Of a stretch of 64,000 nt of DNA, positions 17,149 to 51,557 are shown one piece after another. A program made the position numbers and the translations under genes. This DNA comes from Rebecca billardiae RCC1528 (taxonomy: Eukaryota; Protista; Haptophyta), in the NCBI GenBank assembly GCA_965240325.2, contig OZ251224.1, forward strand, positions 2,604,001 to 2,668,000, given 5' to 3'. The notes under the pieces were generated by a model. It searched no databases. It was not told the DNA's origin and worked only from the letters and a program-made list of their open reading frames with translations. Each line of letters opens with the position of its first letter. Positions within the stretch are counted from its first letter, which is position 1.

Positions 17149-17157
17149 TAAACTGTA
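17149..17157. repeat. Left target-site duplication TAAACTGTA
   Basis: Identical 9-mer at 34924-34932, immediately outside the other TIR. Confidence 0.97.
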
Positions 17158-17646
17158 GGGAAAACCCCGGAAGTCCGACGAGGACCGACCGAGCAACCAG
17201 AACTCCGACAAACCTCCGCATCTCAGCACGGCGATTTCCGGACTGGCACCCCCGCCAGTTTTCCGACGGCCAGAAGCTTCGGGAGCGAGCAAATGGCGCC
17301 GCTCGCCCGCAACGCGGAAGATACCGCTCGCGGCGAACCGGCGCGAACGCCCGCCTTGTATTCGGGCGGAGTACCCTAATGAGCGGGGGTGGGTACTTTC
17401 GTATTGCGCGCAGCCTGACGCCCACCCGCGACGAAACGACGCCGTCGACTCCTCCCGCCCGGACCGCCGCCGGAACGTTGCTCGTCAATTAGTTAGAGAA
17501 ATGCGACGCCGGGGGGCGCGCCGCAAAACTTGCTCCCGAGCTCGCCACGAGGGACGATCGATGCCTCGCACGACGTTAAGGGGGTACGCCTGCCACGCGC
17601 GCGGGCGTCGTGCGCGCGCCGCGTGGTCGCGCGCGGCGCATCGCGC
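17158..17646 (+). repeat. Left terminal inverted repeat of the MULE (489 bp)
   Basis: Reverse complement of 34435-34923 with no net indel. About 17 mismatches by eye, 11 of them in one 13-nt block. Confidence 0.95.
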
Positions 17647-20600
17647 GCGCGTGTGTCTTCGTTCGCGCGCGCGGCGTGCGCTCGCGCATGTCGTCACGCC
17701 GTGCGTTCTGCGTCGTTGCGCGGCGTCGTGCCCGCGTGCCGCGCGCAGGCCGCCGCCGCCTGCGGGGACGACTCCGACTGCGACGAGCTTCGCGAACGGG
17801 GCTGCTGTGGACGTGGTGTACGAGCAGGGTGCACCGGCAGTCCGTGCTGTGGTCGCGGCGCTTGGGGTCGGCGCACACGGGCGAGTGCAGACGTACGTCC
17901 TCCGGGCTGCCGAGGGAGTGTCTGCTCATGCGTGGGCTGCGGTCCCTGGCGACACCGTCGGTGCGTCCGCGGATGGAACAGTCGAGGGCGCAGGCTCGTT
18001 GAAGAGGGTGCCAGCGGCGCACGTGCGTGCGCCGCCCGCCGGCGAGCAGTGCGCCGAGCAGGGGCAGGGCGCCGAGCAGGGCGCCGAGCAGGGCGCCCTG
18101 CTCGGCGCCCTGCTCGGCGCCGAGCCGGGCGCCGAGCAGGGCAAGCAGGCCGCCGAGCAGGGCGCCGAGCCGGGCGCCGAGCCGGGCGCCGAGCAGGGCG
18201 CCGAGCAGGGCGCCCAGCCGGGCGCCGGGCAGGGCGCCGGGCAGGGCAAGCAGGCCGCCGAGCAGGGCGCCGAGCCGGGCGCCGAGCAGGGCGCCGAGCA
18301 GGGCAAGCAGGGCGCCCAGCCGGGCGCCGGGCCGGGCGCCGAGCCGGGCGCCGAGCAGGGCAAGCAGGCCGCCGAGCAGGGCGCCGAGCCGGGCGCCGAG
18401 CAGGGCGCCGAGCAGGGCGCCCAGCCGGGCGCCGGGCAGGGCGCCGGGCCGGGCGCCGGGCCGGGCGCCGAGCAGGGCAAGCAGGGCGCCGAGCAGGGCG
18501 CCGAGCAGGGCGCCGAGCAGGGCGCCCAGCCGGGCGCCGGGCATGGCAAGCAGGCCGCCGAGCAGGGCACCGAGCCGGGCGCCGAGCAGGGCGCCGAGCA
18601 GGGCGCCCAGCCGGGCGCCGAGCAGGGCGCCGAGCAGGGCGCCGACGGCCGGCCGGCCCGCCACGGCAGCACGCGCGTGGGCGGCGGCAGCTACGCCGCC
18701 CAGGGCATCCAGCAGGAGGCTGCGGGGCAGCGCGGCGCGCAGGGGGCGGCTCACCACAACGGGCGCGGCGGCGTGCGGACGCGGGCCATGCGCCGCCAGC
18801 CGCCACTTGCGCCACCCGCCGAAGCGCTGCCCGGCGTCACCTCGGCGCCGGCGCCGCCGTCGGCGCCGACGGCGGTCGCAGGCGTCACGGCGGCGCCGGC
18901 GGCGCCGCCTGCGGCCGCCGGCGGCCCCGCGACAAGCGACGAACGCGCCGAGCCGCCACGCGCACCCGTCGCAACGCTGGCGCCGGCGCCGGCGCCGCCG
19001 CCGGCGCCGACGGCGGTCGCCGGCGTCACGGCGGCGCCGGCGGCGCCGCCTTCGGCCGCCGGCGGCCCCGCGACAAGCGACGAACGCGCCGAGCCGCCAC
19101 GCGCACCCGTCGAAACGCTGGCGGGTGCCACCGGCGTCACCGCGGCGGCGCCGGCGCCGCCGCCTGCGGCCGCCGGCGGCCCCGCGACGCGCGCCGAACG
19201 CGCCGAGCCGCCACGCGCACCCGCCGAGGCGCCGGCGGCTGCCACCGGCGTCACCGCGGCGGCGCCGGCGCCGCCGGCGCCGGCTGCGGCCGCCGACGGC
19301 CCCGCGGGCGTCAACTCAGATGACGCCGGTGGTGCTGCCTCGGGCGAGGTGGCACGGGCGGCGACGGCGTCGACCGCGACGCGCGCCGAACGCGCCGAGC
19401 CGCCACGCGCACCCGCCGAGGCGCGGGCGGCTGCCACCGGCGTCACCGCGGCGGCGCCGGCGCCGCCGGCGCCGGCTGCGGCCGCCGACGGCCCCGCGGG
19501 CGTCAACTCAGATGACTCCGGTGGTGCTGCCTCGGGCGAGGTGGCACGGGCGGCGACGGCGTCGATGGGTGGAGCGGCGGCTGGCGCAGCGGGGTCGCAC
19601 TCCCATGCACCACAGCAGGCGCCCGCCGCCGCGCAACCCGGCGGTGGCGGCCACGCTGACGACGGCGGCGGCGTCTACGGCAGCGGCGACGGCGGCTCAC
19701 GCGAGCTGTTCGCGATGAGCGATGTCTTGCAGCACGTGGATCATTTCTTCAGCGGCATCTACGGGAAACGCCGGGGGTTCGGCGGAGACACGCCCGCCGC
19801 GCCGGCGCAGGCGCACGCGCACGTGCTGGTGCGCCCCAGCGCGGTGGCGGATGCGGACGCGCGGACGACGAAGCACGGGCCGCAACCGAACAACGGCCGA
19901 TTGGTGCCGGCCATCCTCAGGTTCAACCGCGCGTTCGCGTCACGGCATCTCGGCGGCGGCGGCGGCACGGTCCGCGTGGTGAACGTGGTGTGCGATGCCA
20001 CGAACAACAAGCACTTCGGCGTGCTCACGGATGCCGACGCTGTGCGCGAGCTGTGCGCCTCGGGCGCCTTGTACACGCGCAGCGAGGTGGACGATGCGGT
20101 GCGCGAGTTCTACGCCGGCGCCGCCGCGAGCGTCGGCGGCTCTGTCTCTGAGCTCGCCCTGCGCGCAGCAGGCGAGCACTTCGGTGTGCACGGCCCGTTG
20201 CCCTACGTCCTCGACGCGGACGTGCGAGTCGCCTTAGCGGACGCTGAGGCCGACGACGATGGCGTCGCAGGCGGCGACGCGCCCTGGGTTCACCGGGCGC
20301 TTGCGTTGCCCTCGATGCGGCGCTCGGGACAGGCGGTGTTCGGCCTCCCCGCCGTGGTTGCACAGGCGCCCTCCTGGTGCGCGCTTGTGCCCACGCCGCT
20401 GCGGGCGCCCGCTGAGCAGGGGACGTCGCCTTTGCTGCACGCCGCCGTGGCCGTGGTGGACTACCGGTCCGTGGACACCGACGACACCGACGAGTCGGAG
20501 CCCGTCGTCGGCGCGCACGCGTACGCCATCCGCTTCGAGAAGGGCTGGCGCCTCCTCACCTTCGCCACGCGGCCGCCCAGTGGTGCGGCGGGCGCGATGA

Positions 20601-23200
20601 CGGCTGCGACGTGCACGGACCTCACGGTCGACGCCTTCGCCGCCGCCGTCAGCCGGCGTGAGGTTGCTGCGTGCGAGCTGCAGTCAGCGCCGCCGCGGGC
20701 CATTGCGCCCCCCGTCCAGCACGCCGCCCCCGCGCTCCACGACTCGCCGCCCAGCCCGGACGAGACGGACGCGTTGCCGCCCCGCCCGCGCCGGGACGTG
20801 GTCCCGACGTCCACGGACGTGCTCATGGGCGCCTCCGCGGTGTGCAGCGCGCTCGGCATCGGGCCATGCCATTGGGCGCCCGATGGCGACCCGCCCGGGC
20901 TCATGACGAACGCCGCGGCCATCGCGGAGGCGGCGCTCACGTACGTGCAGTCGAACTACGACGTGATTGGGGGCACGGCGGCGTCGGCGGACCTGCTGCA
21001 CACGCTCCACCAGATCATGGTCGCCGGCCGCCCGCAGCGCTCGTTTGACAGGCCTCTCCCCCGGCCGGGCGGTGGGACGCGCGTGCGCGTCGCAGGCGTC
21101 GTCGGCGAGCTGCCCGTCCATGAACAAGAGCTGATGCTCGCCTCGAAGCACACGTGCGTCGCGGCGGCCATCGCGTGCGCCTCGGCGCTCGTGCTGCGCG
21201 TCAAGGCGGCACACCTGCGATACGACGCCCTCGCCGACGTCAGCGTGGGCGATGGTGCGTCCTTCGAGGCGGCGGACTACCTCACCAAGGTGCGCATCGT
21301 CAGCGCACGGCTCGTCGCGCCCGAGCGGAAGAAGCGGCTCACCTTCGAGCTCCTCGCCGTCTCCGAGGATAACGCCGGTGCTTACGACCGCGTGCTCAAC
21401 GCCGACACGAGCTCGCGGGCACTCCACCGGGACGAGGTGCTCGAGTTCACCTACGTGCCTTCGAAGACGCGCTCGTGGAAGTCGACGGAGGCGCTGTCAA
21501 CGCACAGCCGCGCGGCGGCCGGCGACGACGCCGACGCCGGCAACTTCGGCACGCTGTTCTTCGTCCCGCACATGCGCGACCCCGTGAAGGCAGCCGCCCT
21601 GGCGCGCCCGCCGCCTGCCGGGACGCCACCTGCCGCGCCGCCCGTGGGTGCGATTGTGGACTTTCGCCCCTTGTGCATCAGCGTGTGGGCTGACATCGTC
21701 CCGTTCTGCCAGGATCGGCTCTGGACGCACCCGGCGGACCCAGTCACCGGCAAAAGCAGCGGCGTGGACGCGCCGAAGATGTACGCCGCCGCGCTCCACA
21801 GGCGCGCGCCCTCGCTGGCGCGGCACGTACAGGCGGCGCCAGCGCGCAAGCGTCGCCTGAACGAACGCGGCGCCGACGCGGGCGGCGCGGGCGGCGCCGC
21901 CGGTGGGCGTGTGGTGGCGCGCCGGCCGGTCGGCGACCCGGGCCGCGTCGCCGTCACACGGCCATCCGCCGTCGCGCGCGCACCCGGGCCACCCGAACAG
22001 GCGACGCGCATGTGCACCGAGCTCGCTGCGGCCCACGCCCAGCTCGCTGAGATGGTGCACGGCATCCCCAACGCAATGGCACAAGCGATCGGACAACTCG
22101 CTGCGAACGACGCCAAGCGCCAGAAGGACTACGAGGCCTGGCGCGCGGCGGACGACGAGCGGCGCCGGCAGGAGCGCGCGGCGGACGAGGCCTGGCGCCA
22201 GCAGGAGCGCGCGGAGGCGGCGCGCCGACGCGACGAGGATCGCGCGGCCGCAATGAAACGTGACGAGATCGCGAGCGCGATGGTGGCGTCTATGCAGGCG
22301 TTGACGCAGTTCATGATGGACCGCAGCGCAGGTGGCGCACAGCCCGGCCCGCACGCGTCGGCGCACGCGGCGTGCGTCCAGCTGCCAACAGGCGAAGCAC
22401 CGCACGGCGCGCACGCCCCGGCTGCGGGCCCGTCGGTGAGCGCTGCGTCCGCTGCGCCCACGTCGCGCGCACCCACGGCACGGCGTGGCGCGCCGCCGCC
22501 GGTCGCATTCGGCCAGCGCGCGCGGCGCCGAGTGCCGCCCCCTGACTCGCGTGTGCCCGCCAGGCCGCTGCACTGTCGCTCCGTGCGCCGGCCGCGCAGG
22601 CCGACGAAGCCCCCGCGGGCCAGCCCCCGCCGGCCGCGCAGTAGACGCCGACCCACAAGGGCGCGTCCTGACGTGCCCACGCGCCGCCCACAGGTGCGCG
22701 CACACACCACATCGGGCGGCGCCAGCCGTGCGCACGCCGAGCGGCGTGTACGCGCAGCCCTGGCTCAGTCGCGCCCGACCGCCCCCGTGCGCGCGCGCGC
22801 GTCGCGGTGGCGTGCACAGGCTGCGCGCCACCCGGGGCGGCCACGCGGGTGGCCGCCACCGCTGGCAGCATCTGGCCACGAGCTCGGCACCCGGGGTGCC
22901 GGCGGAGTGGCTCGTCGGAATCGCCGTGGCCTGAGCCCGGTTCTCCGAGCACACGGCCACAGGCACCCCCCCGGCCAGCGCCTCTGCGCCACTCGCAGTG
23001 ACGGCGCCACAAGGGCCTACGGCGGGGCCCGCCGAGAAGGTCTTAGCGCAGGTCTTAGCGGGATGCAAGCAGCGCCACGCGCGACAACACTGATACACGC
23101 CGCCGGGGGCCCACACTGTGCCGGCCCGTGCTATGTCGTCGTCAGCTCGGACGCAGGCCGGCCGGCCGGTGCCGTGAGTCGGCGCCTGTCGTTCTGTTAG
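17501..23200 (+). CDS. MULE accessory protein (mudrB-like position) of unknown function; true 5' and 3' exon limits uncertain
   Basis: 1899-codon stop-free frame starting within the left TIR. Possible small beta-barrel (Tudor/SH3-like) at ~17790-18035, long repeats, globular region ~19700-21800 and a coiled coil at ~22010-22320. Confidence 0.7.
18050..18642 (+). repeat. Coding minisatellite built on a 12-bp GGCGCCGAGCAG unit ([16 protein letters not shown])
   Basis: Directly visible tandem array of about 590 bp with variant units. Confidence 0.95.
18844..19564 (+). repeat. Two pairs of near-identical coding tandem duplications (~140-bp and ~190-bp units)
   Basis: [16 protein letters not shown]...[12 protein letters not shown] occurs twice; [15 protein letters not shown]...[21 protein letters not shown] occurs twice. 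Confidence 0.9.
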
Positions 23201-26200
23201 CTGGCACCTGGCGTGCTCAGGCGGCGTGGTGCGCACTCAACGTACCCCTGCAAGGGTGATGTAGCTCGCATGAAGTGCGCCAGACGCCCCTCGTTGTTGT
23301 CGCGCGCCGAACGCGCCTCCAGGGGCGCCGTCGCCGACACCACCGCGCCGAAGTGGCAACGGCCGTCGTACACCACGGCCATCCACGTCGTGCCCAACTG
23401 CGTGACGTCCAGACGCTGCAAGGCGCGCCGCGTGCGCTCGTCACGCAGGCGCAGGTGCGCATGCGTGCTCACTGCGACGCTGCCCTTGCGCCCGCCGTCG
23501 TCAGTCCGCCGCCAGCGAAGGCCCGGCCGCGTCTGCACGGGGTAGAACCAGACGTTGTCGGTGAACGCGCGCCACGCCGCCTCCTCCGGCGTAGCCCCGC
23601 CGCGCAGCTCAAGGACCACCAGCGGCAGGCCCGTGGCGCGCGCCGTCGCGACGTGCGAGCCCCACGCCGACCACGCACCAGCGCGCGCCGCATGCGCGCC
23701 AGCGCCGTCGCCCGTGTACCGGGCGCCGCGCGCGTACGCGCGCGCCGCTGCTCCCAGCGTCCGCACGCCTCCAGTATGTCGCAGTGGCAGTGGCAGCACC
23801 TCCTGCCAGTCCTCGTCCTGCACTTCGAGTCCTTGGCCGGTGCGGGCCCGGGGGATGGATGCTGGCTTGACGCCAAGCATGCCGAGCGCGCTTGCCGCCG
23901 ACGCCGTGGCCGACGCCGTGCCGAGCGTCTCGCCCGGTCCGTGCTCGTCCTCCCACGACGCGATGTACGAGCACACGCCGTCGCGCAGCGTCTGCGCGCG
24001 CGCGTTGGCGGCGGGCAGGTCGGCCCGCACGCCACGCGTGTCGTGCGCGAGCCACGCGTGAAAGTAGCAGTCGCCATCGCCGGGAACGTCCTGCACGCTC
24101 GTGCCGCCGCCGAAGAGCTCGCGGATGGCCGCGGCGACGTTGCCGTCGCCATCCACGCCGCCGGGTGCTCCTGTCTGTGCACCAGCCCGCGCCTCGGGCG
24201 GCAACGCCGGCGGCAGGGGCAGCACGGGGAAGCCCAGGCGCTCGAGCAGGACCGCGGCGTCGTCCACCGGCGCGTGCACGTGTGCGGCGGCCGCCGGAGC
24301 CACCGCAGCCGGCGCAGCCCCGTGCCCGGCGGGCGCCGGCGCCGCCGCACCCGCGTCCACGGTGGCGTCCGTCGCCGCCGCGGCGCGCGGCGCGGCTGCG
24401 CCGCGTGGCGCGGCATCACCCGCCGTCACGTCAGCGCGGCATCGCTCCGCCGTCACGTCAGCGGCGGTCTCGCCCAAGGCCAGGCGCAGCCCCAAGCCCA
24501 CGTCGCACCGCCATGCCCCGTCGGAGCCGTCGAGAGGGACCACCTCGGTGCCGAACGCGCTCGGGTCCAGCGCATCCACCTCGCACCCGCGCCGCCTGGA
24601 CGCCAGCCTCACGTGCGCGTCCGCAGCCGGCTGGAACGCACTCCAGCGCGACGCCGGCAACACCCCGTGCGCGCGCGGGGTGGCCTGCGGCGCAACCACT
24701 GCGTAGAACTGCCGGCGAGGACACACGTTGCGCACGATGGCCACCCAGCCGGTGCCCATCGCCCCGACGTCGAGCGTGCGCAGGACGCGTGCGTGCGTCT
24801 CGCGTCCCAGGCTCAGGCGCGCTTCGCACAGCGGACGTGCGTCCGCGTGCGCGGCGCCTGCGTCGGGCGTGTCGGCGCGCCGGCGCTTCGCGCCGGCGCC
24901 CCCGCGAGCGCGTGGCGCCGCCGGCGCCGGCGGCACGCGCACTGCCGTCGGAGGATACCACCGCACGTGCTCACGCATGGCGACGCCGTGCACGTCGCGA
25001 GCTCGGCGTGCGTAGGCCATGTCGAAGACGAGGAGGTGCACGCCGGCGGCGCGAGCGACTGCCGCGTACCACTCAGGGCCATCGCACGTGTTGCCCGGGC
25101 TGCTGACGTACCCGTCGCACGTGTACTCCGCCGCTCGCACTGCCAGCGTCACTGCGTCGTCCAGATCGCGCACGCCCTGGCCGGGGGTGTGCCACGACGA
25201 CGAGTCGTCGGGGGCCACCATGCGCAGAGCCCGCAAACGCGCCTGCCCAGCTTCGTCGCCACCTGCGCTCTCCGGGGGAAGTGCGCGCACGTCAGCGCCG
25301 CACAAGCCGATGAAGCGCGCCTGCGCTCGCAGGTCCTCTGCCGACTCGGCCGGGCCCAGCGCGCCACCCCAGCCGACGGAGTGCTCGGTGGGCGTCGCAT
25401 GCGCGTGCGCGGCCAGCCACGACGCGGCCGCCGCGCGCAGGCGCCGCGCGCAGCACGCCCACCACAGGGCCTCAAGCGTGCTGGGCGGACGCGCCCGCGC
25501 GTGCGCGTGCGCGAGCACCGCGTGCAGCACGTCGTCACCGTCGGCTGGCACGGGCAACGGCTGTGCGGCGCCCGCGCCCCAGAGGTCGTCGAGCACTGCC
25601 TGGGCGCAGCACAGCCGTAATCGGGCGAATTCGGCGTCGTGGTCGTCTGCGCCGGCGGCGGCGTCGGCGGCGTGGAACAGGCGCACCGGCGCGTGGCGGT
25701 CATCGCCCGCGGCGCGCGCTCCAGCGTCGCGCACCGGCAGACCAGTGCGCGCCAAGTGGGCGACCGCGTCGTCCGCGGTGGCGACGGCTGTGTCGTCCGC
25801 GGCACCAGACGTGCCACGCGCCGTCCCCAGCAGGTCGGCGCCTGCGCGCGTTGGGCCCGGCGTCGGCACCGACCGCGCCGCCGACGATGGCCCCGCCGTG
25901 GACGCGCGGGCGCCCGCCGCCTGGCGCGAAGCCGGCGGCAGGCGCCCATCCGCGGCCGCACCGCCCGCGTCGTCGGCGGCGGCCGCAGTCCGAGGGCGCT
26001 TGGGCGCGCACGGCGCAGACGCGGCCCCCGCGCCCGCGCGGGAGGTGCCAGCCGCGGCGCCCGCCTGGCCTGCGGCGCCTGCGCCCGCGCCGCCGCCGCC
26101 AGCCAGGACGTCCGCCAGGCCCGCCGCCGCCGCCGCGACGTCGTGTGCGCCTGCGTGCGCCCACACGTGGGAGGCCGCGTTCGGAGCGGCGCCGCCCGAG

Positions 26201-29200
26201 CCCCTCGCGCCGCCACTGCCCTCGGCGGGCACGGCGGGCGACGCGTGCGCGCGCGCCAGCTCGGCGGGGGCGGCGGCGGCGCGCGCAAACTGTGCCAGCA
26301 CCTTGCCCGTCGTCGCGCTGGACGCGCCGAATGCGTCACCGGCCGTCTCGCTGAGCGTGGGCCACGGTGCTGACAGGCCGCGACTGCACATGAACATGGC
26401 TGCCCTGCCCCGACCGATGCCAGGTATGCGCTGCAACGCCGCGAGCACTGCGGCGCTGTCGTCAGCGAGGCGCGCGTACGCCGACTCGGACTCCGCCGCC
26501 TCCGCCGGTGGCTCTGCCGCGCCCGCGCGCGCCCGAGGGACTCGCGCACCCGGTGGCGGTGGCGCGTGGGCGCCGGGCCACGGGGGGCGGAAGGGATGCT
26601 CAGTCGCCGCCAGCGGTACTGTGTCGCCCGTGGCCGGCAGCGGCTCCGCGGCGTGCGCGCGCGCGCGCGCGGCGGGCGTCGTGCCGGCGTCCGCGCCACT
26701 GCGCGGGCCCGTCGTGCCCTCAGGCGGTGCGGCCGGCCGCTGCGTGGCGGCGTTTGGCATCGGTGCCGTCGCGAAGCCCATGCGTACGCCGGTGCCGCCA
26801 AGTGCCTGCGAGGCGATCGCGCGCGCGCAGTGCCGGCGCGGGCCGCCGCGCGCGCCCGCGCCCGCCGCGGCGGCGCCGTCGCGCGTCTGGGCGGCCGCCG
26901 GCTGCGCGCGCCCGGGCGCGGGCGCCGCCGCGCCGCGGCCCCCGCGGCCGCCTGCGCGGCCCCCGCGCGCGCCTGCGGTGCGCGCGGGGTCGCCGCGCGC
27001 GGCCCCACCGCCGTGCTGTCCGCGCATACGGTGGTATGGCACGTCCTCCGGCCTCGCGCCGCGCGGCCCGTCGGGCGCCGCCGCCTCGCCCGCCGCGGCT
27101 GCGCGCGCTTCGCGCAGGCGCTTCCACGCCCCCGCGACGAGCAGGAAGTAGCAGCACGTGCACATGTACAGCCCGCTGTCCAGCGCGCCGAGGTGCCACA
27201 CATACTTGCACTGCGCGGGCGAGTGGATGAAGCAGGCGCAGCCCTGGCACGCCAGTCGGGGGTCGATCGGCGGCGAGTCCGCCGGCCACGCCGCGCTGAG
27301 GTCCGCGGCCTCGGGGTCGAAACACGCGCAGCAGCGCAGTTGCGCGGCGGCGGTCGTGCCGGCCGTGTACGTGGCAAAGTGGCGACGTCGCTGGTTCGCA
27401 ACCACACCCTCGCGGAGCGGGCCGGCCACGCGCACGAGCACGTTAGTGTCGTCGAGCACGTGCGTGTGCGCGATGCCGTACAGGTGCTCCGGCAGCCCCT
27501 CGAGCACACGCGCGAGCTCGTCGCGGTGCGCTTCGCGCACGCGCCGGGCGAAGTCGCCGTCCGGGGCTTGCTCCCTCAAGGGGCGCACGTACGACGCCGC
27601 GGATTTGCCCAACTGCACGCGCGGCGCGCGCGCGCGCGGTGCGCGCGGGTGGCGCGCCCCGGCGCGGCCCTCCCAGAACGCCAGCCGTCGCGCCGAGGAC
27701 GCGGGCCTGCCCACGCGCGCGGGCACCGCTGGCATGGCCACGTACTTTTCGAGCAGGGCGCGCTTGGCGAGAGCGGGCAGCAGCAGAGCCGCAATGGCGT
27801 CCTCCAGGCGCTGGGGCGGTGTGATGACGTCGAGCTTGGTGATGGCCACGACGCGCCCGAGCGTGTCCACCCGGGTGTCGTTGGCGTCGCGCTCGACCCG
27901 AAGGCCCACCTGCGCGAACCACGTCTCGCAGCGCAGGTCCTGGGGCAAGCACGTGCCCATGGCACGGCCGACGGAGGTCGCCACGCGGCAGAAGTGCATG
28001 CACGGCAGGCGCTTGCGGCGCAGCAACGCGCAGCACCGGAACTCGTCGAGGTACACGTGGCGCGGCGCCGAGCCGTCCGTGGTGTTGAGCATGCGCAGGG
28101 CACCTGCGTGCGGCCCGTCGAGGACACGGTGCACTTCCACCTGAGAGAGCGTGCGCGCCGTGCTCACCTGCTGGCGCACGTATTCCAGGTGCCGTGGCGG
28201 CAACCCGTGCACCTCATCATCGGCGTCGGGCTTCAGGGCGTGGCGCACGGCGACGCTGCGGTGCGTCGCGTAGAGGCGAAAGAGGTTGTCGTGCAGGTCG
28301 AGCAGCATCCACACCGGGCCCTGCGCCTTGCGCACCGGCAGCAGCCAGTGCATGAAGGACTCCGCCGGCGCGGACGTCACGTAGCCGCGCAGGGACACCG
28401 GCGCGAAGCACGGGAAGAGCTCCTCGCGGGGGATGACGTCGAGGATGCGCTTGGCCGACTCTGGCATCTCCACCCAGGCGGCCTCCCACACCTCCTCGGT
28501 CAACGCGTCCACGCACGCGTCGAACACGCGCAGGATGGTGGGCACCTCGTTCGCCGAGTGTGCGTAGCCCGTGATGAAGGTCTGGCGCTTGTGGAACGTG
28601 CACAGGAAGAGGTGCCTGCGCGGGCACAGCAGCTTCCACGCGCCGCGCAGGCCCTTCTGGCCGTCCGAGATGGTGACGCCGTTGGGGTCGTCCCACACAG
28701 CCGCCCCGCCGAGGTGCTGCATGAGGTATCCGACGTGCGCGCACCACGAGTCCAGGCACTCCACGTCGACGATGTACGACACGCACAAGACGAACAGCTG
28801 CCGGTTGGCGTTCACGGCCAGCGTGACGAAGAGCATGCCTGCGTCGCGCGCGTGCGTGCGCGCGGGCAGGTCAGACGGGCGGGCGCTGAGGCGGCACGGA
28901 CGCACGCGGCGTCGCGAGGGCGTGCCCGGGTGCGGCGGGCGCGCGCACCCGCGCGCTTCGCGCCACCGCTGGCGGGGCGGTGCAGGAAGCACGCGTCGCT
29001 GAACGCGGCCGTGTTGCCCTTCGCGTGAAAGTGCTCGCGGTAAAGCGCCTTGGCCTGCTTGGGCACGTAGTGGAAGCCACCCACTGCCTTCTTGCCGCGC
29101 ACGTCAGCCAGCGCCTTCTGCACCTCCGCCGCGTCGGGGTTGAAGGCCGCGCGCTGCGCGCCCGCCGGCAGCCCCTGCTGCACCTCGTCGTGCACGCGGC

Positions 29201-32200
29201 CGAACATGGCCAGCAGCGCGTCCTCGACCGAGTTCTCGTGGAAGATGATGGGCGCGACCTCGTTGCCCTCCTGCGACAGCGACGCGCACACGGCCACGAG
29301 GTCGCGCGACATGGCCGTGTCGTCCCCATAGATCTCGGCGCGCGCTTCTTTGTGCGCTCGCGCGATGAGCGATTCACCCATGGGGAGCTCTGCGTCCAGC
29401 TGGCGCGCGACCTCTCGTGCTTGCTGCGGGCCGTAGCACAGCTGCGCGTGCGTGGTCCCGCGCCGGGCCAAGCGCGCCTTCCAGTCCTCGACGATCGCCC
29501 GCCCGAGCTCGTGTTGGGAGTACGGCGTCGTGCGCACGCCCGGCTGGTTGGTCGGGCGCGGCAGCGAGCCGATGGGGTGTTCCTCGGACCCCTTGCCCAT
29601 GCGCAGGTTGCGGCACATGGAGCCGTGCGCGACCGAGCGTTGCACGGCCCACGGCGGCGCGCCAAACGTGTCCACGTACTTCGACGGGCCCACCACCACC
29701 ACGGACGGGCACCCGGGCGTGGGGCATCCGATCGTCAGCTTGGCGCGGTCGACGCGCCGCGTCGGCGGCATGGCCCCCCGGTGCAGCGCGCACTCCGAGG
29801 CGTGCGTGAGCGCGTCGGCGAGGCGCGGGTACACCTGGCGCACCATCGGGGGCTCGAGCAGGGTGGCGTCCGCCTTCACCTGGGAGTACGGGCGCGGCGC
29901 CCGCAAGCCCATTTTCCTCCACAGTGCCAGGGGCCGGAGCTCGAGGCGGTGCGCTGCCGCCGACGTGCTCGCCGAGGTGCTCGACGGCGCGGAGTAGCGG
30001 AAGTACCCGGCGTCACCGCCGTGGTGCAGCGACTCCGGCGCAACAAGCCGGGCGCCGGCCTGGCCGGCGCGGGGCTCGGCGGGACCGGTGGAGGGCGGCT
30101 GCGCGCGAGCGACGATGGGTGGACACGGCATGAGGGCAGCCAGCGGGTCGCGCGCGCGAGCGGCGTCGCTGTCGGCGGACTCGTCCGCCTGCAGTGCCGC
30201 CTGCGCCGCGCGCGCGCGGGCGTCCGCGCAGTCGTCGTCCGCGATGCCCTCCTCCCAGTCGCGCACGTCGATGGCGGCACTGGCGGGATCGGCGTCCGTG
30301 ACGAGCGGCTCGCCGCGGGCGTCGGACTCGCCGACGCGCATCGTCGGCCAGTCCGCGCTCAGGGCGAACAGCGGCGCGTTGCCGCGGGCGGCCGCCGTCG
30401 TGTGCGTCCTATGGCCCACGGACGCGTCGACGAGGGGCACTCCACCGCGCGCCCATGCGGGCGCCGACTTCTCCGTCGCCAACGCGTCGGCAAGGTGGCC
30501 ACCGAGGTGGGCACGCTGGCCGGCGTGCAGGGCCAGGGCGAGGTCCCCGCCGGACAAGAGGCCACCTGCGTGCGGCAGCGCAGGGAGGGCCCTCAGCCGC
30601 GCGTCGTCGTCGTCATTGCCGCCGTCGCCACCGGAGGCGCCGCGCGGCTGCGGCGGCGCGCGCGAGGCGCAGCCGGGCGGCTGCGCGATCACCGCGCGCG
30701 CGCTGCTGCTGTCGAGGGGCGGCCCCGCCGGGTGGAGTGGCGGGCGCGCCGTCGCGGCGCACACAGCGGCGCCGGGCACCGTCACCGCGACGCAGGGCAC
30801 GGCGTCGCCCGCAGCGCAGGGTGCGCCCGGCGCTGGCGTTGCCACGCGAGCGGGCGAAGAGTGCCCATCGCCAGGCCGCGGCGACGCGGGCTCGTGCGCG
30901 CCCGGCGCGTCCGAGCTCGAGCTTTGGCGGGCGCCGGTGTGCCGCAGCGGGGCGGACGCTGCGTCGGGGCGACGCACGGCCGTGGGCGCGCGCGGCCCGA
31001 CAGCCGGGTCGTCAACGCCATCGGCGCGTGGGGGCCGCGCGCCCTCGTCAAAGGGGGCGCCCACGTGCGCGCCCGTGCCGTGCGCGGCCGCGGCGGTGGG
31101 CGCGCGCCCACCGCCGTCGGCGTGAGGCGCGGGGTGGCCGCCCGCAAGCCCCACGACGTGGGGCACGGCAGGCGCCGCTGCGCGCTCATGTGCGAGCTGC
31201 GCGCCGTCGGCAGCGCACACGGGCAGCGCCAGCTGCAGCGCCGACTGCGCCCAGGCCCGCTGCTCGTGGTCCGACGGCGCCTGCTGGCCGTGCGCCGCGG
31301 TCGGCAGGTCGACCACCAGGCGGGAGACGTACTCGTGGTGCGCAGGCGAGCCGAGCCGGAAGCGGGCGTCAGCGCCAGCGCGCGTGGGCTCAGCCCCCCA
31401 GCGCAGCCTGGTCTCAAACGAGTGCTGGAGCCCGCGCTCGAGGGCGGGCACGAGCCGATACGGCGTGGGAGGCGGGTCGGAGCGCGCCGCGCACGGCGTG
31501 GCGGCGGGGCGAGGCGCGCTCGGCGGCGGCGTGAACGAAGCGCGGAATGTGTCCGCGAGGCCCCGCCCCCCGAATGAGAACACAGCCTTCAGGACGAGCG
31601 CGTCCGCCGCACCCTGACGCGTAGGCCTCTTGCGCGAGGACGACGGCACGGACCCCGAGGACGCGGCGCGCGCACTGGGGGCCGAGCGGTGATGCCACAT
31701 GGCGGGGAAGATGTGCACTGCACCTGCGCTTTCCTGCAGGGCAACGTCGCCGTGCAGCGGCACGGCGTCGGCGCGCGCACCGGGGGGGCGCGCGCCGACC
31801 GTCTGCAGCGGGAAGGGATTGGTGGGCACACTTTGCGGCAAGTGCAAGAGGACCACTGCCGTCCACAGATGGTCCTCGTCGGTCGTGCCGTCGACGTGCC
31901 ACCCGTACGTCGTGACGTCGCCGTCGTCGCACGTGCCGCGGCCCCCGTCGGGCGGACGCATCGGCCGCCCGAAGACATGCCAGGCCGTGAGGTCGAGCGC
32001 GTCGAGGCCGCGGACACCGTCAGAGGCGTCGCCGCGGAACAACGAGCTCACGACGCCCTTCAGCGCCGCCACCACGCGCTCAAAGGCGCGGCACCCCAGC
32101 ACCGAGCGCGCAGAGGAGCCGTGGTCGCCCACCCCCCAGCGCCGCTGCGCGGCCGCCTCGCCGCCCGCGTCCGCGGACTGGTACGCGTGCACCGTGCGCA

Positions 32201-34103
32201 GGAGGCCGCCACCCTCATCCAGCAAGGGCATGGACGCATCGCCGTCCCCGCCGAGGCCTGCGTGCTGCAGCACGTACTCGCGCAACGGGCCAACCAGCAC
32301 GCCCATGTCCATGTCCAAACGCTGCGGTGCCGCAGCGGCGGCACCAAACGCGGCCTGCAGCGCGCGCCCAACCGCGGTGTTATGCGCGAGCATGTCGTCG
32401 AGGCTGGGCGCGGGCGCCGCCGCAGGCGTCGGCGCCAGCGCGTCGCCCAGCGGCGGCTCGCCTGCAGGCGGCAGCGCGCGCGGCACCACCACGGCGGAGG
32501 CAGGGCGCATCGCGCCCGACGCCGCGCTCGTCACCTCGTCGCGCCACGGCGCAGCGGCGCCCACGACAGCGTGCGCACCGCACAGCGTCAGCACCAGCGT
32601 CACTGGCGGCTGCGAGACGGCCGCGCCGGCCACGAGGGCCTGCGCGAAGGTGGCGTCGAGCAAGGGGTGCAGACGCGCGCCCTCGCCGACGTGCACCAGC
32701 GCGGGCGCGAGCGGGATGACCACTGCCCACACGGTGCGCTCGGCGATGGTGGAGGCGGCCCGCAGCAACGGCCGCGCCAGCCACCCTTCGCGCAGCGAGC
32801 CGTCCTCGCACGCGGCCACAAAGGCCGCAAGACCGGCGTGGCCGTCGGCGACCACGGCAGCACGCAGCCTGACGGCGGCTGCGCGCACGGCGGCGTCACG
32901 TCCAGCGGCGGCGCCGGACGTGGCAGCGCGCGGCGCTCCATCTGCCGCCACCCCTTCGCCGGCCCCCACGACGGCCTGCGAGACGGCGCCGAGCCACGCC
33001 AAGCGGGCGCTCTCGAGTTCCGCACGCAGCTGCTGGTCGCGCCAGCGTGCCTGCTCAGCCGACGCGGGAACGAACGCGCGCGGCTGCGCCGGCACGGGCG
33101 CGCAGAGCGCGCGTACGGCAGCGTACGCCTGCGTGCGCAGCTCCGCCGCTCGCGCACGCAGCGCGTCCGCGCAGAGGCTGCTGCGGCCTGCTGGCCACGA
33201 CGCCACGCGCTCGAAGGCGACGAACAGAGGCTCGGACTGGCCAGCGTCCGCGCCGAAGACGGCGCGCGCGTAGTACATCACCGCCTCGGACGGGCATGAC
33301 AGCGGCGGGCACGGGGGGGGCGCGCCCGTCCAAGCGCCCGACGGCGCCGCCGCCGCCGCCGTCGTCGCCGGGAGCACGTCGTCGACGCCTCCGCCAGTCC
33401 CAGCACCTGGGCGGGCATCCGGACGGGGGGCGCACAACGCCGCCAGAGCCAGCTTCGTCCGGAACGGAGCGGCGGCCCAGGCCGCACGCACTGCCCACGC
33501 GCATGCGCCCTGCGCGTGCTCAGCGGCGCGTGCGTGCTGCCCTGGGGTCGGCGCCGAGGACGACGGCGACAGCGACTCCGCGCCACCCGAGCGGCGCGCG
33601 TGGGACGTGCCTGCGGGCGGCGGCGCCGGTTTCCCTCCGAGCGCCGCTGCGGACGCCGTCAGTCGCGCCGTCTCCGCGAAACTGCCCTCCTCCGCCAGAG
33701 CCCCGTCGGCGGAAGCACCACAGGCAGCGCGCACGGCGATCTGCGCGACGGCCCTGAACCAAAGGGCCGCCGCGCACACGCGCGCCACCGAGTCCGCGCG
33801 CTCACGCAGCGCGTCCGGGTGCGAAGCCAACAACTCCGCACACTCCACCACAGTGAGCAGCGCGTCGGCGCCGCTGCCACCCCATACGCGCGGCACTGTG
33901 ACCTGCGCGGCGGCGGCGCCAAGGCCCACGTCGGTGCTGTGGACCACGCCGAGGGTGCACAGCACCAGACCAAAGGTGAACGTCCACGGGGCTGCTGCCG
34001 AGGAGAACTGCAGCGTGCACAACGCGTCGTCAGCCGCTGCGATCACCGCGTCCACGAGCAGCAGGTCGTCCTGACTGCTGGGGCCGGCGGACACATGCCG
34101 CAT
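23197..34103 (-). CDS. Multidomain MULE transposase (~3,600 aa): 2OG-Fe(II) oxygenase-like, MuDR Zn-finger, DDE, SWIM, PHD, HhH, pseudo-OTU, OTU; predicted exons 34103-28949 and 28838-23197
   Basis: Intron 28839-28948 (GTGCGC...ACGCAG, phase 1) joins the two ORFs inside the catalytic domain: SDACFL...GMLFVTLAVNAN...ISDGQKGL...CTFH...AESF. SWIM RCC...LPCMH at ~27990-28040; PHD at 27151-27333; LQRIPGIGRGRA at ~26400-26440; PGDGDCYFHA at ~24060-24085 with CHFGAV at ~23345-23358. An upstream exon is possible (acceptor-like site at 34110). Confidence 0.88.
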
Positions 34104-34434
34104 GCCCGCCTGCGCGGTACGTGCCAGCACGTGCGGCGGAGAGGCAAACGCAGGCGCGCGCGAGCACACACACGGGGCACATCGTCAGACAGGGGACGGG
34201 GGCGCATGGGAGTGGTGCGGTGTGCGCGCGCGCGGCGGCGCACGCCACCAACATCGCTGCCGACCACACACACCCGCCCCGGCCCACCGCGACCTCGCAC
34301 CATTCACGAATCACGAGTGCGACTTGCCTGCTCGTCGCGGCCGGCGACCGTCGACGCCTCAGACCGACTCGGATGCGAGAAGGGGGAACTCCTGCGAGGG
34401 GAGGCCGCAGGGAACAAGAACGGTCGGTGCGTGT

Positions 34435-34923
34435 GCGCGATGCGCCGCGCGCGACCGCGCGGCGCGCGCACGACGCCCGCGCGCGTGGAAGGCGTACCCC
34501 CTTAACGTCGTGCTCACGCCCAGCCCTCCCTCGTGGCGAGCTCGGGAGCAAGTTTTGCGGCGCGCCCCCCGGCGTCGCATTTCTCTAACTAATTGACGAG
34601 CAACGTTCCGGCGGCGGTCCGGGCGGGAGGAGTCGACGGCGTCGTTTCGTCGCGGGTGGGCGTCAGGCTGCGCGCAATACGAAAGTGCCCACCCCCGCTC
34701 ATTAGGGTACTCCGCCCGAATACAAGGCGGGCGTTCGCGCCGGTTCGCCGCGAGCGGTATCTTCCGCGTTGCGGGCGAGCGGCGCCATTTGCTCGCTCCC
34801 GAAGCTTCTGGCCGTCGGAAAACTGGCGGGGGTGCCAGTCCGGAAATCGCCGTGCTGAGATGCGGAGGTTTGTCGGAGTTCTGGTTGCTCGGTCGGTCCT
34901 CGTCGGACTTCCGGAGGATTCCC
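34435..34923 (-). repeat. Right terminal inverted repeat of the MULE
   Basis: Reverse complement of 17158-17646. Confidence 0.95.
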
Positions 34924-34932
34924 TAAACTGTA
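34924..34932. repeat. Right target-site duplication TAAACTGTA
   Basis: Matches 17149-17157. Confidence 0.97.
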
Positions 34933-43435: not shown

Positions 43436-44614
43436 TCAGCGACGCTGCGACGACTCGAGCACGCGACGGAACGTGCTGTTGATCGCGAGAGCGCGCTCGC
43501 AGTCGACGGAGCAGAAATCGTCCGCGCGCACCGACCGCTCGAAGGCAGCACGGAGCGCAATCGGCTCGTGCCTTTGTGCAAGGAGCTGGCTGTCGGCCTG
43601 AAGAGTGTCCACCCACAGCGCACCCAGCTGCGCTGCCGACGCGCAGCGCAGCGGGAGTCGAAGGGAGCCCGCTTGCACGCCGTCGGTGATCGATCGGACC
43701 ATGCGCCGGACGAGGGCCCGCCGCGCTAGCACGGTGTGCGGCGGCGAGAGGCCGGCGCGGTGCGCACAGTCAAAGAGCTCGAGCAGCCGCATGTCCGCGC
43801 TGCTGATTGGACGGCTGTTGCGCCAGCCGCTGTCGCTCTGCATGCGCGGCCGCGGCTGCCGCACCCGCGCGCATGCGCGAGGCGCGCGCACAACCTCGCA
43901 CACGAAGCGCTCGAGTATGCTCGCGCTCGTGTCGTGCAGGTCCAGCACGCTCACACGCGCTCCTGCGCGCGCCCACAGGCCCCGCGCCTCGGCTGGCGTG
44001 GGGAACGTGCCGCCCCAGCGCCCAGCCGGTGTGTGCGCTTCCGTCAGCATGTCGAGCAGCGCGCGGAACCGCGGCTCGCCGCGGTGGAGCATGCGCTCGT
44101 GTGAGACGCCGAGCTTGGCGATACGCTCGGTGTGGCCACTCAGGATCAGCTCAAAGAGGCGGCGGTACACGATCACGACGCGCACCTCAAACCCACAGGC
44201 GCGCAGCTCGCGCAGCAGGCGACGCGCGCGCACGTCCGGCTCGCTCAGATTCTCGTTCGTCAGCAGCAGGTGGCCACCCGCGCGGGACGCGTTGCGTGCG
44301 ATCGCGACGAACGCGTCCCACACTCGCACGGCCTGCGCTTTGGGCAGGTGCCCGGGCAGGAGCGCGAGCGCGAGTAGGTAGTGGTTGTTCACATCCTCCG
44401 GAGCAATGCTACGAGGCGGTGGTAGGTCGGGCAGATGCGGCACGATAAAGCGATCGTCGTGCTCAAGGATGCGTTTCACGGGCGAATTGCTGCGCAGGAG
44501 CGCCCATTGCAGGCTCGTGCTGCCCGTCTTGGCGGGGCCGACGTGCACGATCGCACGGGGCAACGCATGCGCGCGCGCGATCAGCACAATCGTGAGACTG
44601 CCATGCCTAAGCAT
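43436..44614 (-). CDS. Sulfotransferase-like P-loop protein with N-terminal signal/anchor
   Basis: IVHVGPAKTGSTSLQ (5'-PSB-like), LLLTNENL and VVIVYRR...S (3'-PB-like); single exon. Confidence 0.7.
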   Translation of the reverse strand: MLRHGSLTIVLIARAHALPRAIVHVGPAKTGSTSLQWALLRSNSPVKRILEHDDRFIVPHLPDLPPPRSIAPEDVNNHYLLALALLPGHLPKAQAVRVWDAFVAIARNASRAGGHLLLTNENLSEPDVRARRLLRELRACGFEVRVVIVYRRLFELILSGHTERIAKLGVSHERMLHRGEPRFRALLDMLTEAHTPAGRWGGTFPTPAEARGLWARAGARVSVLDLHDTSASILERFVCEVVRAPRACARVRQPRPRMQSDSGWRNSRPISSADMRLLELFDCAHRAGLSPPHTVLARRALVRRMVRSITDGVQAGSLRLPLRCASAAQLGALWVDTLQADSQLLAQRHEPIALRAAFERSVRADDFCSVDCERALAINSTFRRVLESSQRR

Positions 44615-44721
44615 GGGCCGGGTGGACAGACTGGAAGGGAAAAGGTCAAAAGGCGAGCTGACGTCTGACAGGCGACAAAGCCAAGCCGGAAGGGCGGACG
44701 GCGGACAGGACGGCGGGCGTC

Positions 44722-46425: not shown

Positions 46426-46964
46426 TTACTCGTCGCAGTAGAAGAACTTCGTCGCGTCATAGCAATCGCCAAGCTTCACCTCGGACGAAACGGCCTCGAA
46501 GTAGGCGCAGTCCGCGTCCGGGTGCGTGTTGGCATCCAGCAGCACCTCGTAACCCGCAAAGAACGGGATGTACGAGGGCTTCTCCTTGCCCTTGCCGTCG
46601 CGCCAGATGCCCGGGTGCCCGTAGTCCGAGAAGCCGACCCAGACGTCATCGCCCTGGGTCAGATCGTTGAGCAGCTGGTAATCCTTGCGCGACGTCCACT
46701 CCATGATCTCGGCACTCGGGTCCGACCCGCTGATGCGGTGGCACCACTTCTGAGCCTGCGCGCGAGACAGGTGTAGGGTGGCGCGCGCGGCGCGAAGCGC
46801 GCAATCGGTCAGCGCAAGCGCCGCACACGCACACCGCGGGCAAAGGCGACGGAGAGCGCACGCGAGCGGCCGTCGGGGGACGGCAAGGACAACGCGGCGA
46901 TGGCACGTACATCGTTGTAGCTCATCGGCCCGTACTTCTGGTGGATGGCACCGAGATCAGGCAT
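46426..46964 (-). CDS. Stand-alone C-type lectin-like domain protein, copy A (127 aa); exons 46964-46911 and 46755-46426
   Basis: MSYNDAQKWC, VWVGFSD and DCAYF...GDC...KFFYCDE give the 4-Cys CTLD pattern; GTACGT...CGCAG intron. Confidence 0.85.
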
Positions 46965-51191: not shown

Positions 51192-51502
51192 GGTGGCAGC
51201 GAGAGGGAAGGCTTACGTAACGAGGAAAGGGAAGGACGGCTCGGGCTCGGATCGATTTCGCCGGTGGATCTCAATTAGATCCCGGTTCACGCCCAGCCGA
51301 GCCGTGGTCCACGTGCGTGCGCGCTGGCGATCGTCATCAATTCAGACCGAATGATGGGCGATCAACTTTGACGATCGTTTCGCTAACGACATTCGGTTGG
51401 TCCGGCAGGGCGGCAGCCGGCAAGCGGTCCACATCTGCGCCGGACTCGGCAGGCCCGGCGATGCCGACTGGTCGGGCTTGTCACGCCGGGGTTGAGGGCG
51501 GG

Positions 51503-51505
<3 letters not shown>

Positions 51506-51557
<52 letters not shown>
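51506..51557 (+). repeat. Poly-G tract (52 nt)
   Basis: Uninterrupted G homopolymer flanked by further G-runs. Confidence 0.9.

What the first reader, a model, noticed from the sequence alone, without database searches (positions are those of the whole stretch)
23197..34103. ~3,600-aa transposase fused to a possible chromatin reader/eraser toolkit (2OG-Fe(II) oxygenase + PHD + HhH + OTU)
Seen: one 110-nt intron fuses the two minus-strand ORFs, and it must be spliced because the first catalytic Asp (SDACFL) and the rest of the DDE core lie on opposite sides. The product carries an HxD...H oxygenase-like domain, a CPTPGC...H...C Zn-finger, DDE, SWIM, a C4HC3 PHD finger, an HhH motif and OTU domains. 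Known: PHD fingers often read H3 tails, OTUs are deubiquitinases, some plant MULEs carry Ulp1 proteases, and TET/JBP oxygenases travel with KDZ transposons. Inference: a self-contained targeting or anti-silencing machine. I do not know this combination in a single MULE polypeptide; it is the best candidate for a new system in this window.
Basis: partly seen in the sequence, partly recalled or inferred. Interest (0 to 1): 0.92.

Follow-up and report, generated by a model that had tools for sequence, protein, structure and literature searches.

The report
Giant Mutator-like transposon with OTU-like tail
This is a complete, recently inserted 17.8-kb Mutator-like DNA transposon in a very GC-rich eukaryote, whose ~3,600-residue transposase has a probable OTU protease tail; the proposed oxygenase "eraser" domain found no support in any test.

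Summary
Two minus-strand ORFs join through a GT-AG intron (110 nt, or 128 nt with another donor) into a stop-free 3,598-codon CDS (34103..23197). Host-like codon usage marks the annotated frame in 70 of 71 windows.

This matches the layout of Mutator/MuDR.

- **MULE DDE core:** Pfam E 0.006, below threshold, but the D, D, E residues are in the right order.
- **OTU Cys loop:** every weak hit is an OTU (Pfam OTU E 0.22, two nairovirus OTUs and a bacterial OTU in the PDB).
- **Upstream OTU-like copy:** a paralogue of the second (E 3e-6) that lacks both the Cys and the His.
- **HhH:** a weak motif match (E 0.077).
- **PHD-like finger:** a non-random Cys/His cluster (0 of 20,000 shuffles) with no profile hit.
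- **2OG oxygenase:** unsupported. There were zero hits in 1.84 billion proteins, Pfam and the PDB, and HxD...H occurs 10 times in the protein.
- **Structure:** both single-sequence AlphaFold runs failed.

MULE+OTU and MULE+PHD fusions are already published. Verdict: an oversized variant of a known kind, not a new system.

The parts
17158..34923 (.). Whole transposon, 17,766 bp, 75.8% GC against about 66% in the flanks
   Evidence: It is bounded by TIRs and a perfect 9-bp TSD. There is no second copy in the window.
17149..17157 (+). Left target-site duplication, TAAACTGTA
   Evidence: It is identical to 34924-34932. The insertion site is locally AT-rich and intergenic.
34924..34932 (+). Right target-site duplication, TAAACTGTA
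17158..17646 (+). Left terminal inverted repeat, starting GGGAA...
   Evidence: blastn gives 490 aligned bases at 96.9% identity to the reverse complement of 34435-34923. Identity is 47-50 matches per 50 columns from the tip inward over the first 400 columns.
34435..34923 (-). Right terminal inverted repeat
28949..34103 (-). Transposase gene exon 1, residues 1-1718 plus one base of the split codon. It contains a 1,400-aa orphan N-terminal region, a zinc finger and the first catalytic Asp.
   Evidence: The reading frame is open. The annotated frame scores best in 34/34 windows.
28839..28948 (-). Inferred intron, 110 nt, GTGCGC...CGCAG. An alternative donor at 28966 gives 128 nt.
   Evidence: with the frame switch. 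No RNA evidence is available.
23197..28838 (-). Transposase gene exon 2, residues 1719-3598 plus the stop codon
   Evidence: The reading frame is open. The annotated frame scores best in 36/37 windows.
31470..32402 (-). It remains an orphan sequence.
   Evidence: No hit in any search. AlphaFold2 gave pLDDT 34.5.
29589..29771 (-). C-x4-C...H-x3-C zinc-finger candidate (CPTPGC...HGSMC), at the position where MULE transposases carry a WRKY-GCM1 DNA-binding finger
   Evidence: Pattern and position only. There is no Pfam hit. The architecture comparison comes from PMC1702500.
28360..28997 (-). DDE catalytic core (D1703, D1777, E1878, with a CTFHKRQ motif), interrupted by the intron
   Evidence: Pfam MULE PF10551 gives E 0.006 and 17.4 bits, against a gathering score of 27.6. 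The motifs were read.
27994..28035 (-). SWIM-like CC-x9-C-x-H (CCALLRRKRLPCMH)
   Evidence: Single regex hit, also seen in 660 of 20,000 shuffles. No Pfam hit. It sits just after the DDE core, as in MULEs (PMC1702500).
27151..27333 (-). PHD-like cross-brace Cys/His cluster, residues 2221-2281, with 10 Cys and 2 His in 61 residues
   Evidence: The regex hit is unique in the six-frame translation of the window and appears in 0 of 20,000 shuffles. There is no Pfam or PDB PHD hit.
26386..26445 (-). Helix-hairpin-helix motif (LQRIPGIGRGRAAMF)
   Evidence: Pfam HHH gives E 0.077. The best PDB hit is the HhH of a 3-methyladenine glycosylase II, 2yg8, at E 0.39.
24613..25695 (-). OTU-like domain 1, degenerate. 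It has Asp (D2821) at the Cys position and Gln (Q3095) at the His position.
   Evidence: It is a paralogue of domain 2: BLASTP E 3e-6 with 29% identity over 129 aa, and the two are colinear in alignment A1.
23200..24225 (-). OTU-like domain 2, with the Cys loop DVPGDGDCYFHA (C3309) and CHF (H3547)
   Evidence: The PDB top hits are nairovirus L-protein OTU domains 7y5m and 11ny at the Cys loop, E 0.1. The A1 profile hits only EschOTU 6w9s, E 0.66. Pfam OTU gives E 0.22 over model positions 1-43. The loop regex appears in 9 of 20,000 shuffles. The C-terminal half gave no hit.
17501..23200 (+). Second, convergent giant ORF (1,899 codons). The coding signal covers only about 17801-22450. It contains a 12-bp tandem array at 18043-18645 and repeats with 114- to 192-bp periods within 18843-19565.
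   Evidence: There is no Pfam or PDB match.

Best explanation
The region is the transposase gene of an intact, recently inserted, autonomous Mutator-like (MULE) cut-and-paste transposon of 17.8 kb in a very GC-rich eukaryote.

Shown:
- The element has ~490-bp TIRs and a 9-bp TSD.
- It carries two convergent genes that begin next to the TIRs, as mudrA and mudrB do in maize MuDR.
- The CDS is continuous, has host-like codon usage, runs to 3,598 codons and needs one splice.

Inferred from motifs and order:
- The central 900 residues form the usual MULE unit, made of a zinc finger, a DDE core (D1703, D1777, E1878) and a SWIM-like finger. This unit would bind the TIRs, excise the element and reinsert it with 9-bp staggered cuts.
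- A PHD-like zinc cluster and one HhH follow. They probably add chromatin or DNA contacts.
- The C-terminus is a tandem pair of OTU-like papain-fold domains, of which only the second keeps the Cys and His.

My committed reading is that the second OTU-like domain is an active isopeptidase or protease. It would either cut the long, linker-rich polyprotein into working pieces or remove ubiquitin from the transposase or its chromatin target. The first copy would act as a non-catalytic binding module.

The 1,400-residue N-terminal part and the second gene are lineage-specific orphans. No function can be assigned to them, and no oxygenase has been demonstrated.
For: Element and gene model:
- TIRs and TSD.
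- Spliced CDS without a stop.
- Frame switch at the intron.
- Host-trained codon model picks the annotated frame in 70 of 71 windows.
- By my estimate from the codon-position composition, a stop-free run of 1,785 codons has a chance probability of about e^-22, assuming roughly one stop per 80 codons.
- The convergent second gene shows coding signal.

Domains:
- Pfam MULE is the only family found in the core (E 0.006).
- Four weak OTU-pointing hits from three searches. Because OTU was named before the searches, the multiple-testing burden is far smaller than the printed E-values imply.
- OTU1 and OTU2 are paralogous.
- HhH.
- The PHD-like cluster is non-random.

Published precedent:
- WRKY-GCM1 + DDE + SWIM as the MULE core, C-terminal OTU in Medicago MULEs with a proposed self-processing role, and C-terminal PHD in Ciona and C. 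elegans: PMC1702500.
- PHD in Rehavkus: PMC6446971.
Against: - No homologue of any part was found. Three word-indexed searches, one exhaustive search, one metagenome scan and two viral scans were all empty.
- No family match reaches a curated threshold.
- The OTU evidence covers only the first third of the fold. The His-loop half gave no hit.
- Both AlphaFold2 runs were uninformative, at pLDDT 31.8 and 34.5.
- There is no RNA evidence for the splice or for one continuous mRNA.
- Only one copy is visible, so mobility and selection cannot be measured.
- Protease or deubiquitinase activity is pure inference.
Confidence: 0.72

Rival explanations
1. One reading: the polypeptide is a self-contained chromatin toolkit. 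An N-terminal 2OG-Fe(II) oxygenase (a demethylase or hydroxylase 'eraser'), a PHD histone reader and an OTU deubiquitinase would target insertion or counteract silencing.
For: - By eye, the stretch 31659-31931 can be laid onto the double-stranded beta-helix motif order (WHVDG, then TAVVLLHL, then AVHIFPAMWHH).
- Transposon-borne epigenetic modifiers exist. Examples are TET/JBP in fungal DNA transposons, SET genes in Phytophthora MuDR and Harbinger elements, and VANDAL anti-silencing factors (PMC12730594).
- The OTU and PHD-like parts are at least plausible.
Against: - There was no hit for the oxygenase stretch in Pfam, NCBIfam or PHROGs, in PDB sequences, in 1.84 billion representatives, in phage tblastn or in viral contigs.
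- HxD...H occurs 10 times in the protein.
- No PHD profile hit was found.
- The model was unusable.
Confidence: 0.12
2. The long ORF is not one protein. The OTU-like tail, the N-terminal 1,400 residues, or both are separate genes or captured host fragments (Pack-MULE style) that happen to lie in frame. Extremely GC-rich spacers would leave them without stops.
For: - Linkers such as 27029-26130 reach about 88% GC at all three codon positions and show weak periodicity. By my estimate, at that composition a 300-codon stop-free run is not rare.
- MULEs are known for capturing host genes (PMC6431247).
Against: - The host-trained codon model still prefers the annotated frame in every linker window but one.
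- Both junctions would have to be in frame by coincidence.
- No homologous host gene was found for any part.
Confidence: 0.1
3. The two ORFs are separated by a frameshift mutation, not by an intron, so this copy is a dead transposase gene.
For: Fifteen in-frame GT-AG pairs exist in the overlap, so finding one is not evidence of splicing. There is no RNA evidence.
Against: - About 110-130 nt between D1703 and MLFVTLAV read as Arg-rich junk in both frames, which fits an intron rather than a one-base slip.
- Both flanking ORFs are intact over 1,700 and 1,880 codons.
- The TIRs are 97% identical and the TSD is perfect, so there has been little time for decay.
Confidence: 0.06

Closest known systems
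MuDR / Mutator-like elements (MULEs), e.g. maize MuDR with convergent mudrA and mudrB
   Same: - 9-bp TSD and TIRs of several hundred bp.
- Two convergent genes starting next to the TIRs.
- A transposase core with an N-terminal zinc finger, a DDE domain and a SWIM-like finger (PMC1702500).
   Different: - The element is 17.8 kb, against about 5 kb for MuDR.
- The transposase is 3,598 aa, several times larger than the MULE transposases I know of (from my own knowledge, not measured here).
- The Pfam MULE score is below threshold.
- The second gene and the N-terminal 1,400 aa have no relatives.
- The SWIM is CC...CxH.
Medicago truncatula MULE transposases with a C-terminal OTU protease (Babu, Iyer and Aravind 2006, PMC1702500)
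   Same: An OTU-superfamily papain-like domain is fused C-terminally to a WRKY-GCM1 + DDE (+ SWIM) transposase. A polyprotein-processing role was proposed for it.
   Different: Here the OTU-like unit is duplicated, with the first copy lacking the Cys and His. It is separated from the core by about 1,000 low-complexity residues, and it is too divergent to reach the Pfam threshold.
Rehavkus, and the Ciona and C. elegans MULE-type transposases with a C-terminal PHD finger (PMC6446971, PMC1702500)
   Same: A C4HC3-type zinc cluster lies downstream of the DDE domain, the TSD is 9 bp, and TIRs reach up to about 400 bp.
   Different: No PHD profile match was found here. The spacing is H-x4-C, not H-x2-C. 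Rehavkus is reported in animals only, and its minisatellite lies before the 3' TIR. Here the tandem arrays lie inside the second gene.
Other transposons and viruses carrying OTU proteases: Ginger1 DNA transposons, Helentrons, nairovirus L protein
   Same: An OTU-like cysteine protease is embedded in a very large mobile-element protein (PMC2836005, PMC6431247). The best PDB matches are nairovirus OTU domains.
   Different: The transposition or replication enzymes differ: integrase-like, Rep/Hel, and RNA polymerase. The similarity is limited to the Cys loop.
KDZ and other fungal DNA transposons with TET/JBP dioxygenases (PMC12730594)
   Same: The shared idea is a DNA transposon carrying a 2OG-dependent chromatin or DNA modifier.
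   Different: In those elements the dioxygenase is recognisable by profile or structure. Here nothing in the sequence could be matched to any 2OG family.

Membership tests
Mutator/MULE superfamily of DNA transposons | Target-site duplication of 9 bp (range 8-11 bp) | tested here: met
   A perfect TAAACTGTA at 17149-17157 and 34924-34932.
Mutator/MULE superfamily of DNA transposons | Long terminal inverted repeats | tested here: met
   490 aligned bases at 96.9% identity.
Mutator/MULE superfamily of DNA transposons | DDE transposase matching the MULE domain (PF10551) | tested here: inconclusive
   It is the only family hit, but at E 0.006 and 17.4 bits against a gathering score of 27.6. D1703, D1777 and E1878 and the C..H motif were read by eye. 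No homologue was retrieved.
Mutator/MULE superfamily of DNA transposons | N-terminal WRKY-GCM1-type zinc finger and C-terminal SWIM finger around the DDE core | tested here: inconclusive
   Cys/His patterns sit at the right positions, but there are no profile hits. The SWIM-like regex arises in 3.3% of shuffles.
OTU cysteine protease / deubiquitinase superfamily | N-terminal Cys loop (D-x-P-G-D-G-x-C-x-F-H/R-A) | tested here: met
   The loop reads DVPGDGDCYFHA. Pfam OTU model positions 1-43 match at E 0.22. The PDB top hits are OTU domains aligned on the catalytic Cys. The regex appears in 9 of 20,000 shuffles. All scores are below curated thresholds.
OTU cysteine protease / deubiquitinase superfamily | C-terminal His loop and the overall papain-like fold | tested here: inconclusive
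   CHF (H3547) and a WGS...A.A...P..V stretch were read by eye. The C-terminal half gave no PDB hit. The AlphaFold2 model had pLDDT 31.8.
OTU cysteine protease / deubiquitinase superfamily | Isopeptidase or protease activity | not testable with these tools
   This needs ubiquitin-probe or cleavage assays.
2OG-Fe(II) oxygenases (including TET/JBP, AlkB and P4H types) | Profile or sequence similarity to any family of the superfamily | tested here: not met
   No hit in Pfam, NCBIfam, PHROGs, the PDB, 1.84 billion representatives, phage tblastn or viral contigs.
2OG-Fe(II) oxygenases (including TET/JBP, AlkB and P4H types) | HxD/E...H iron triad on a double-stranded beta-helix | tested here: inconclusive
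   The motif is present but not discriminating, with 10 such sites in the protein. The fold prediction failed at pLDDT 34.5.
PHD finger | C4HC3 cross-brace spacing (C-x2-C ... C-x2-C-x4-H-x2-C ... C-x2-C) | tested here: inconclusive
   All eight ligands are present at residues 2221-2281 and the cluster is non-random (0 of 20,000 shuffles). However, the spacing is H-x4-C, and no Pfam or PDB PHD match was found.
PHD finger | Histone-tail binding | not testable with these tools
   This needs peptide-binding assays.
Helix-hairpin-helix DNA-binding motif | Match to the hhH consensus (L..hPGIG...A) | tested here: inconclusive
   Pfam HHH gives E 0.077 against a gathering score of 24 bits. The best PDB hit is the HhH of an AlkA-like glycosylase at E 0.39. 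The upstream sequence is low-complexity, so no full HhH-GPD domain is present.

The most novel reading that the evidence does not exclude
The 1,400-residue N-terminal part, which has no relative among 1.84 billion proteins, might contain a genuinely new and extremely divergent enzyme such as a 2OG-type oxygenase. Together with the PHD-like finger and the live OTU domain, it would then make this MULE a self-contained anti-silencing or targeting machine on a single polypeptide, with the second orphan gene as a further accessory.
Probability: 0.1. Interest if true: 0.8.

Novelty: new variant of a known kind. Interest (0 to 1): 0.42.

Why it matters
If the gene model is right, this is one of the largest DDE transposase polypeptides I know of. 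It sits in an element that looks capable of moving, with near-identical TIRs, an intact TSD and intact ORFs.

It offers a test case for two open questions. The first is what OTU proteases do in transposons, polyprotein processing or deubiquitination. The second is why a catalytically dead copy is kept next to a live one.

It also shows that, in very GC-rich protist genomes, about two thirds of a mobile-element protein can be invisible to every current sequence database.

It does not establish a new class of system. The transposition machinery and two of the add-on modules have published precedents.

Tried and rejected
- **Homologue searches for an alignment, all empty.** These were three word-indexed searches (MULE-SWIM-PHD region inside the whole ORF, the OTU2 piece, and the 588-aa core piece), an exhaustive HMMER search with the 2OG-like piece, a metagenome scan with the MULE core, viral-contig scans with the 2OG and OTU2 pieces and tblastn against phages.
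- **Structure route.** AlphaFold2 without an alignment gave pLDDT 31.8 for OTU2 and 34.5 for the 2OG-like stretch. I therefore ran no fold search, because the matches would have been meaningless.
- **Exact-product look-ups.** The three element ORFs from their first ATG and three ORFs next to the insertion site were not on record. Two host genes at 43.4-45.9 kb were found on short Logan contigs, which carried no information about the element.
- **NCBIfam and PHROGs scans.** These returned only noise.
- **Full HhH-GPD DNA glycosylase around the HhH.** I considered and rejected this, because the sequence upstream of the motif is low-complexity.
- **TET/JBP membership.** I considered and rejected this, because there is no similarity of any kind.
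- **Organism.** I could not name it. The neighbouring genes only show that it is a eukaryote.

Full report
**1. What is in the sequence**

The window is 60-82% GC. Its neighbouring genes are eukaryotic: a beta-carbonic anhydrase, a Sec16/WD40 protein, PP4R3, a subtilase and an inositol polyphosphate kinase.

They are 28812-34169 (1,785 aa) and 23197-28992 (1,931 aa).

In so GC-rich a sequence, long ORFs also appear in other frames, so I tested coding directly.
- GC by codon position follows the ORF1 frame from about 34.2 kb to 29.0 kb and the ORF2 frame from 28.8 kb to 23.4 kb.
- A codon model trained only on Pfam-supported host genes prefers the annotated frame in 34/34 windows of 150 nt in exon 1 and 36/37 in exon 2.

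**2. The splice**

Removing GT(28948)...AG(28839), 110 nt, gives a CDS of 10,797 nt from ATG 34103. That is 3,598 aa with no internal stop.

D1703 (SDACFL) lies before the gap. D1777 (ISDGQKG) and E1878 (PAESFMHW) lie after it. The Pfam MULE alignment begins at model position 14-17 on the first residues of exon 2.

Three caveats apply.
- A donor at 28966 (128 nt) is equally in frame.
- Fifteen in-frame GT-AG pairs exist in the 290-nt overlap. The dinucleotides alone therefore prove nothing.
- No RNA evidence was available.

A frameshifted pseudogene is the rival. It is made unlikely by the roughly 110-130 nt that read as junk in both frames, and by the intact ORFs on both sides.

**3. The larger unit**

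The gene lies inside a 17,766-bp element at 17158-34923.
- The terminal inverted repeats are about 490 bp and 96.9% identical.
- The element is flanked by a perfect 9-bp direct repeat, TAAACTGTA, in a locally AT-rich intergenic site.
- A second ORF of 1,899 codons runs convergently on the plus strand. It starts in the left TIR and shows coding signal from about 17.8 to 22.45 kb. It contains tandem-repeat arrays and has no family or PDB match.

A 9-bp TSD, long TIRs and two convergent genes make up the layout of MuDR. The maize comparison comes from my own knowledge. The general MULE features are in PMC6446971.

**4. Domain calls, one by one**

- **MULE.** This is the only Pfam family found in the core, at E 0.006, below the gathering score.
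- **Zinc finger (CPTPGC...HGSMC) and SWIM-like CC-x9-CxH.** Both are patterns at the positions expected from the published MULE architecture (PMC1702500), but neither has a profile hit. The SWIM-like pattern arises in 3.3% of shuffles.
- **PHD-like cluster.** Eight ligands lie in residues 2221-2281. The pattern is unique in the six-frame translation and appears in 0 of 20,000 shuffles. The spacing is H-x4-C, and there is no Pfam or PDB PHD match.
- **HhH.** Pfam gives E 0.077. The best PDB hit is the HhH of an AlkA-like glycosylase. The surrounding sequence is low-complexity, so this is not a glycosylase domain.
- **OTU.** Four weak hits from three searches all point to OTU domains and all align on the catalytic Cys loop.
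  - Two nairovirus OTU domains, at E 0.1.
  - EschOTU, found with a two-sequence profile, at E 0.66.
  - Pfam OTU model positions 1-43, at E 0.22.
  - Because OTU was specified in advance, these are much stronger than the database-wide E-values suggest.
  - The half that should carry the His loop gave no hit.
- **Upstream 'OTU'.** It is a colinear paralogue of the second copy (BLASTP E 3e-6). It has Asp at the Cys position and Gln at the His position, so it is catalytically dead.
- **2OG oxygenase.** Nothing was found anywhere. H.[DE] followed by an H occurs ten times in the protein.

**5. Why structure could not decide**

No homologue of any part was retrievable. AlphaFold2 therefore ran on single sequences and returned pLDDT 31.8 and 34.5. 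I did not run fold searches on such models.

**6. Mechanism**

- **High confidence:** this is a cut-and-paste MULE. The insertion is recent, and the element is potentially autonomous.
- **Inferred:** the zinc finger binds the TIRs. The DDE core cuts and joins with a 9-bp stagger. The PHD-like and HhH modules add chromatin or DNA contacts.
- **Inferred, about even odds between the two roles:** OTU2 processes the polyprotein or acts as a deubiquitinase, with OTU1 as a non-catalytic partner.
- **Unassigned:** the N-terminal 1,400 residues and the second gene.

**7. Comparison and novelty**

MULE+OTU (Medicago) and MULE+PHD (Ciona, C. elegans, Rehavkus) are published (PMC1702500, PMC6446971). OTU domains also occur in Ginger1 elements and Helentrons (PMC2836005, PMC6431247). 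Transposon-borne chromatin modifiers are known as well (PMC12730594).

Several features appear new.
- The size: 17.8 kb and 3,598 aa.
- The tandem dead-plus-live OTU pair together with a PHD-like finger and an HhH.
- The second giant orphan gene.
- The complete absence of database relatives.

I file it as a new variant of a known kind, with interest 0.42.

Noticed in passing
window 17501-23200 (+), coding signal about 17801-22450: A second giant orphan gene lies inside the same transposon, convergent with the transposase gene. It has a 12-bp tandem array (AEQG-type peptide repeats, 18043-18645) and repeats with 114- to 192-bp periods (within 18843-19565). It has no Pfam or PDB match. The last ~750 nt of the ORF show no coding signal.
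   Followed up: partly
window 46429-56388 (-): A tandem family of at least five small genes, each with a C-type lectin domain (Pfam Lectin_C, E 3e-6 to 1e-4). Their C-termini are nearly identical.
   Followed up: partly
window 47557-47890 and 48085-48418: A 334-nt inverted repeat, 99% complementary, with a 194-nt spacer, lying among the lectin genes. It could be a foldback element or an inverted duplication.
   Followed up: no
window 43439-45888; loci L001-L003: Two divergent host genes (392 and 389 aa, no Pfam family) are encoded verbatim on ~3.3-kb Logan contigs from runs ERR14847151 and ERR14847148. Reads from the same organism are therefore public and could be mined for element transcripts or empty sites.
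   Followed up: partly
window 17501 and 34580: Because the TIRs are near-identical, the ATG that opens the plus-strand ORF in the left TIR has a twin in the right TIR on the minus strand. The twin is in the same frame as the transposase ORF but is separated from it by a stop at 34185-34187. The true 5' ends of both genes may therefore lie in the TIRs and involve further splicing.
   Followed up: no
window 17158-34923 versus the flanks: The element is about 10 points richer in GC (75.8%) than the 500 bp on either side (66%), and it sits in a short AT-rich patch.
   Followed up: no
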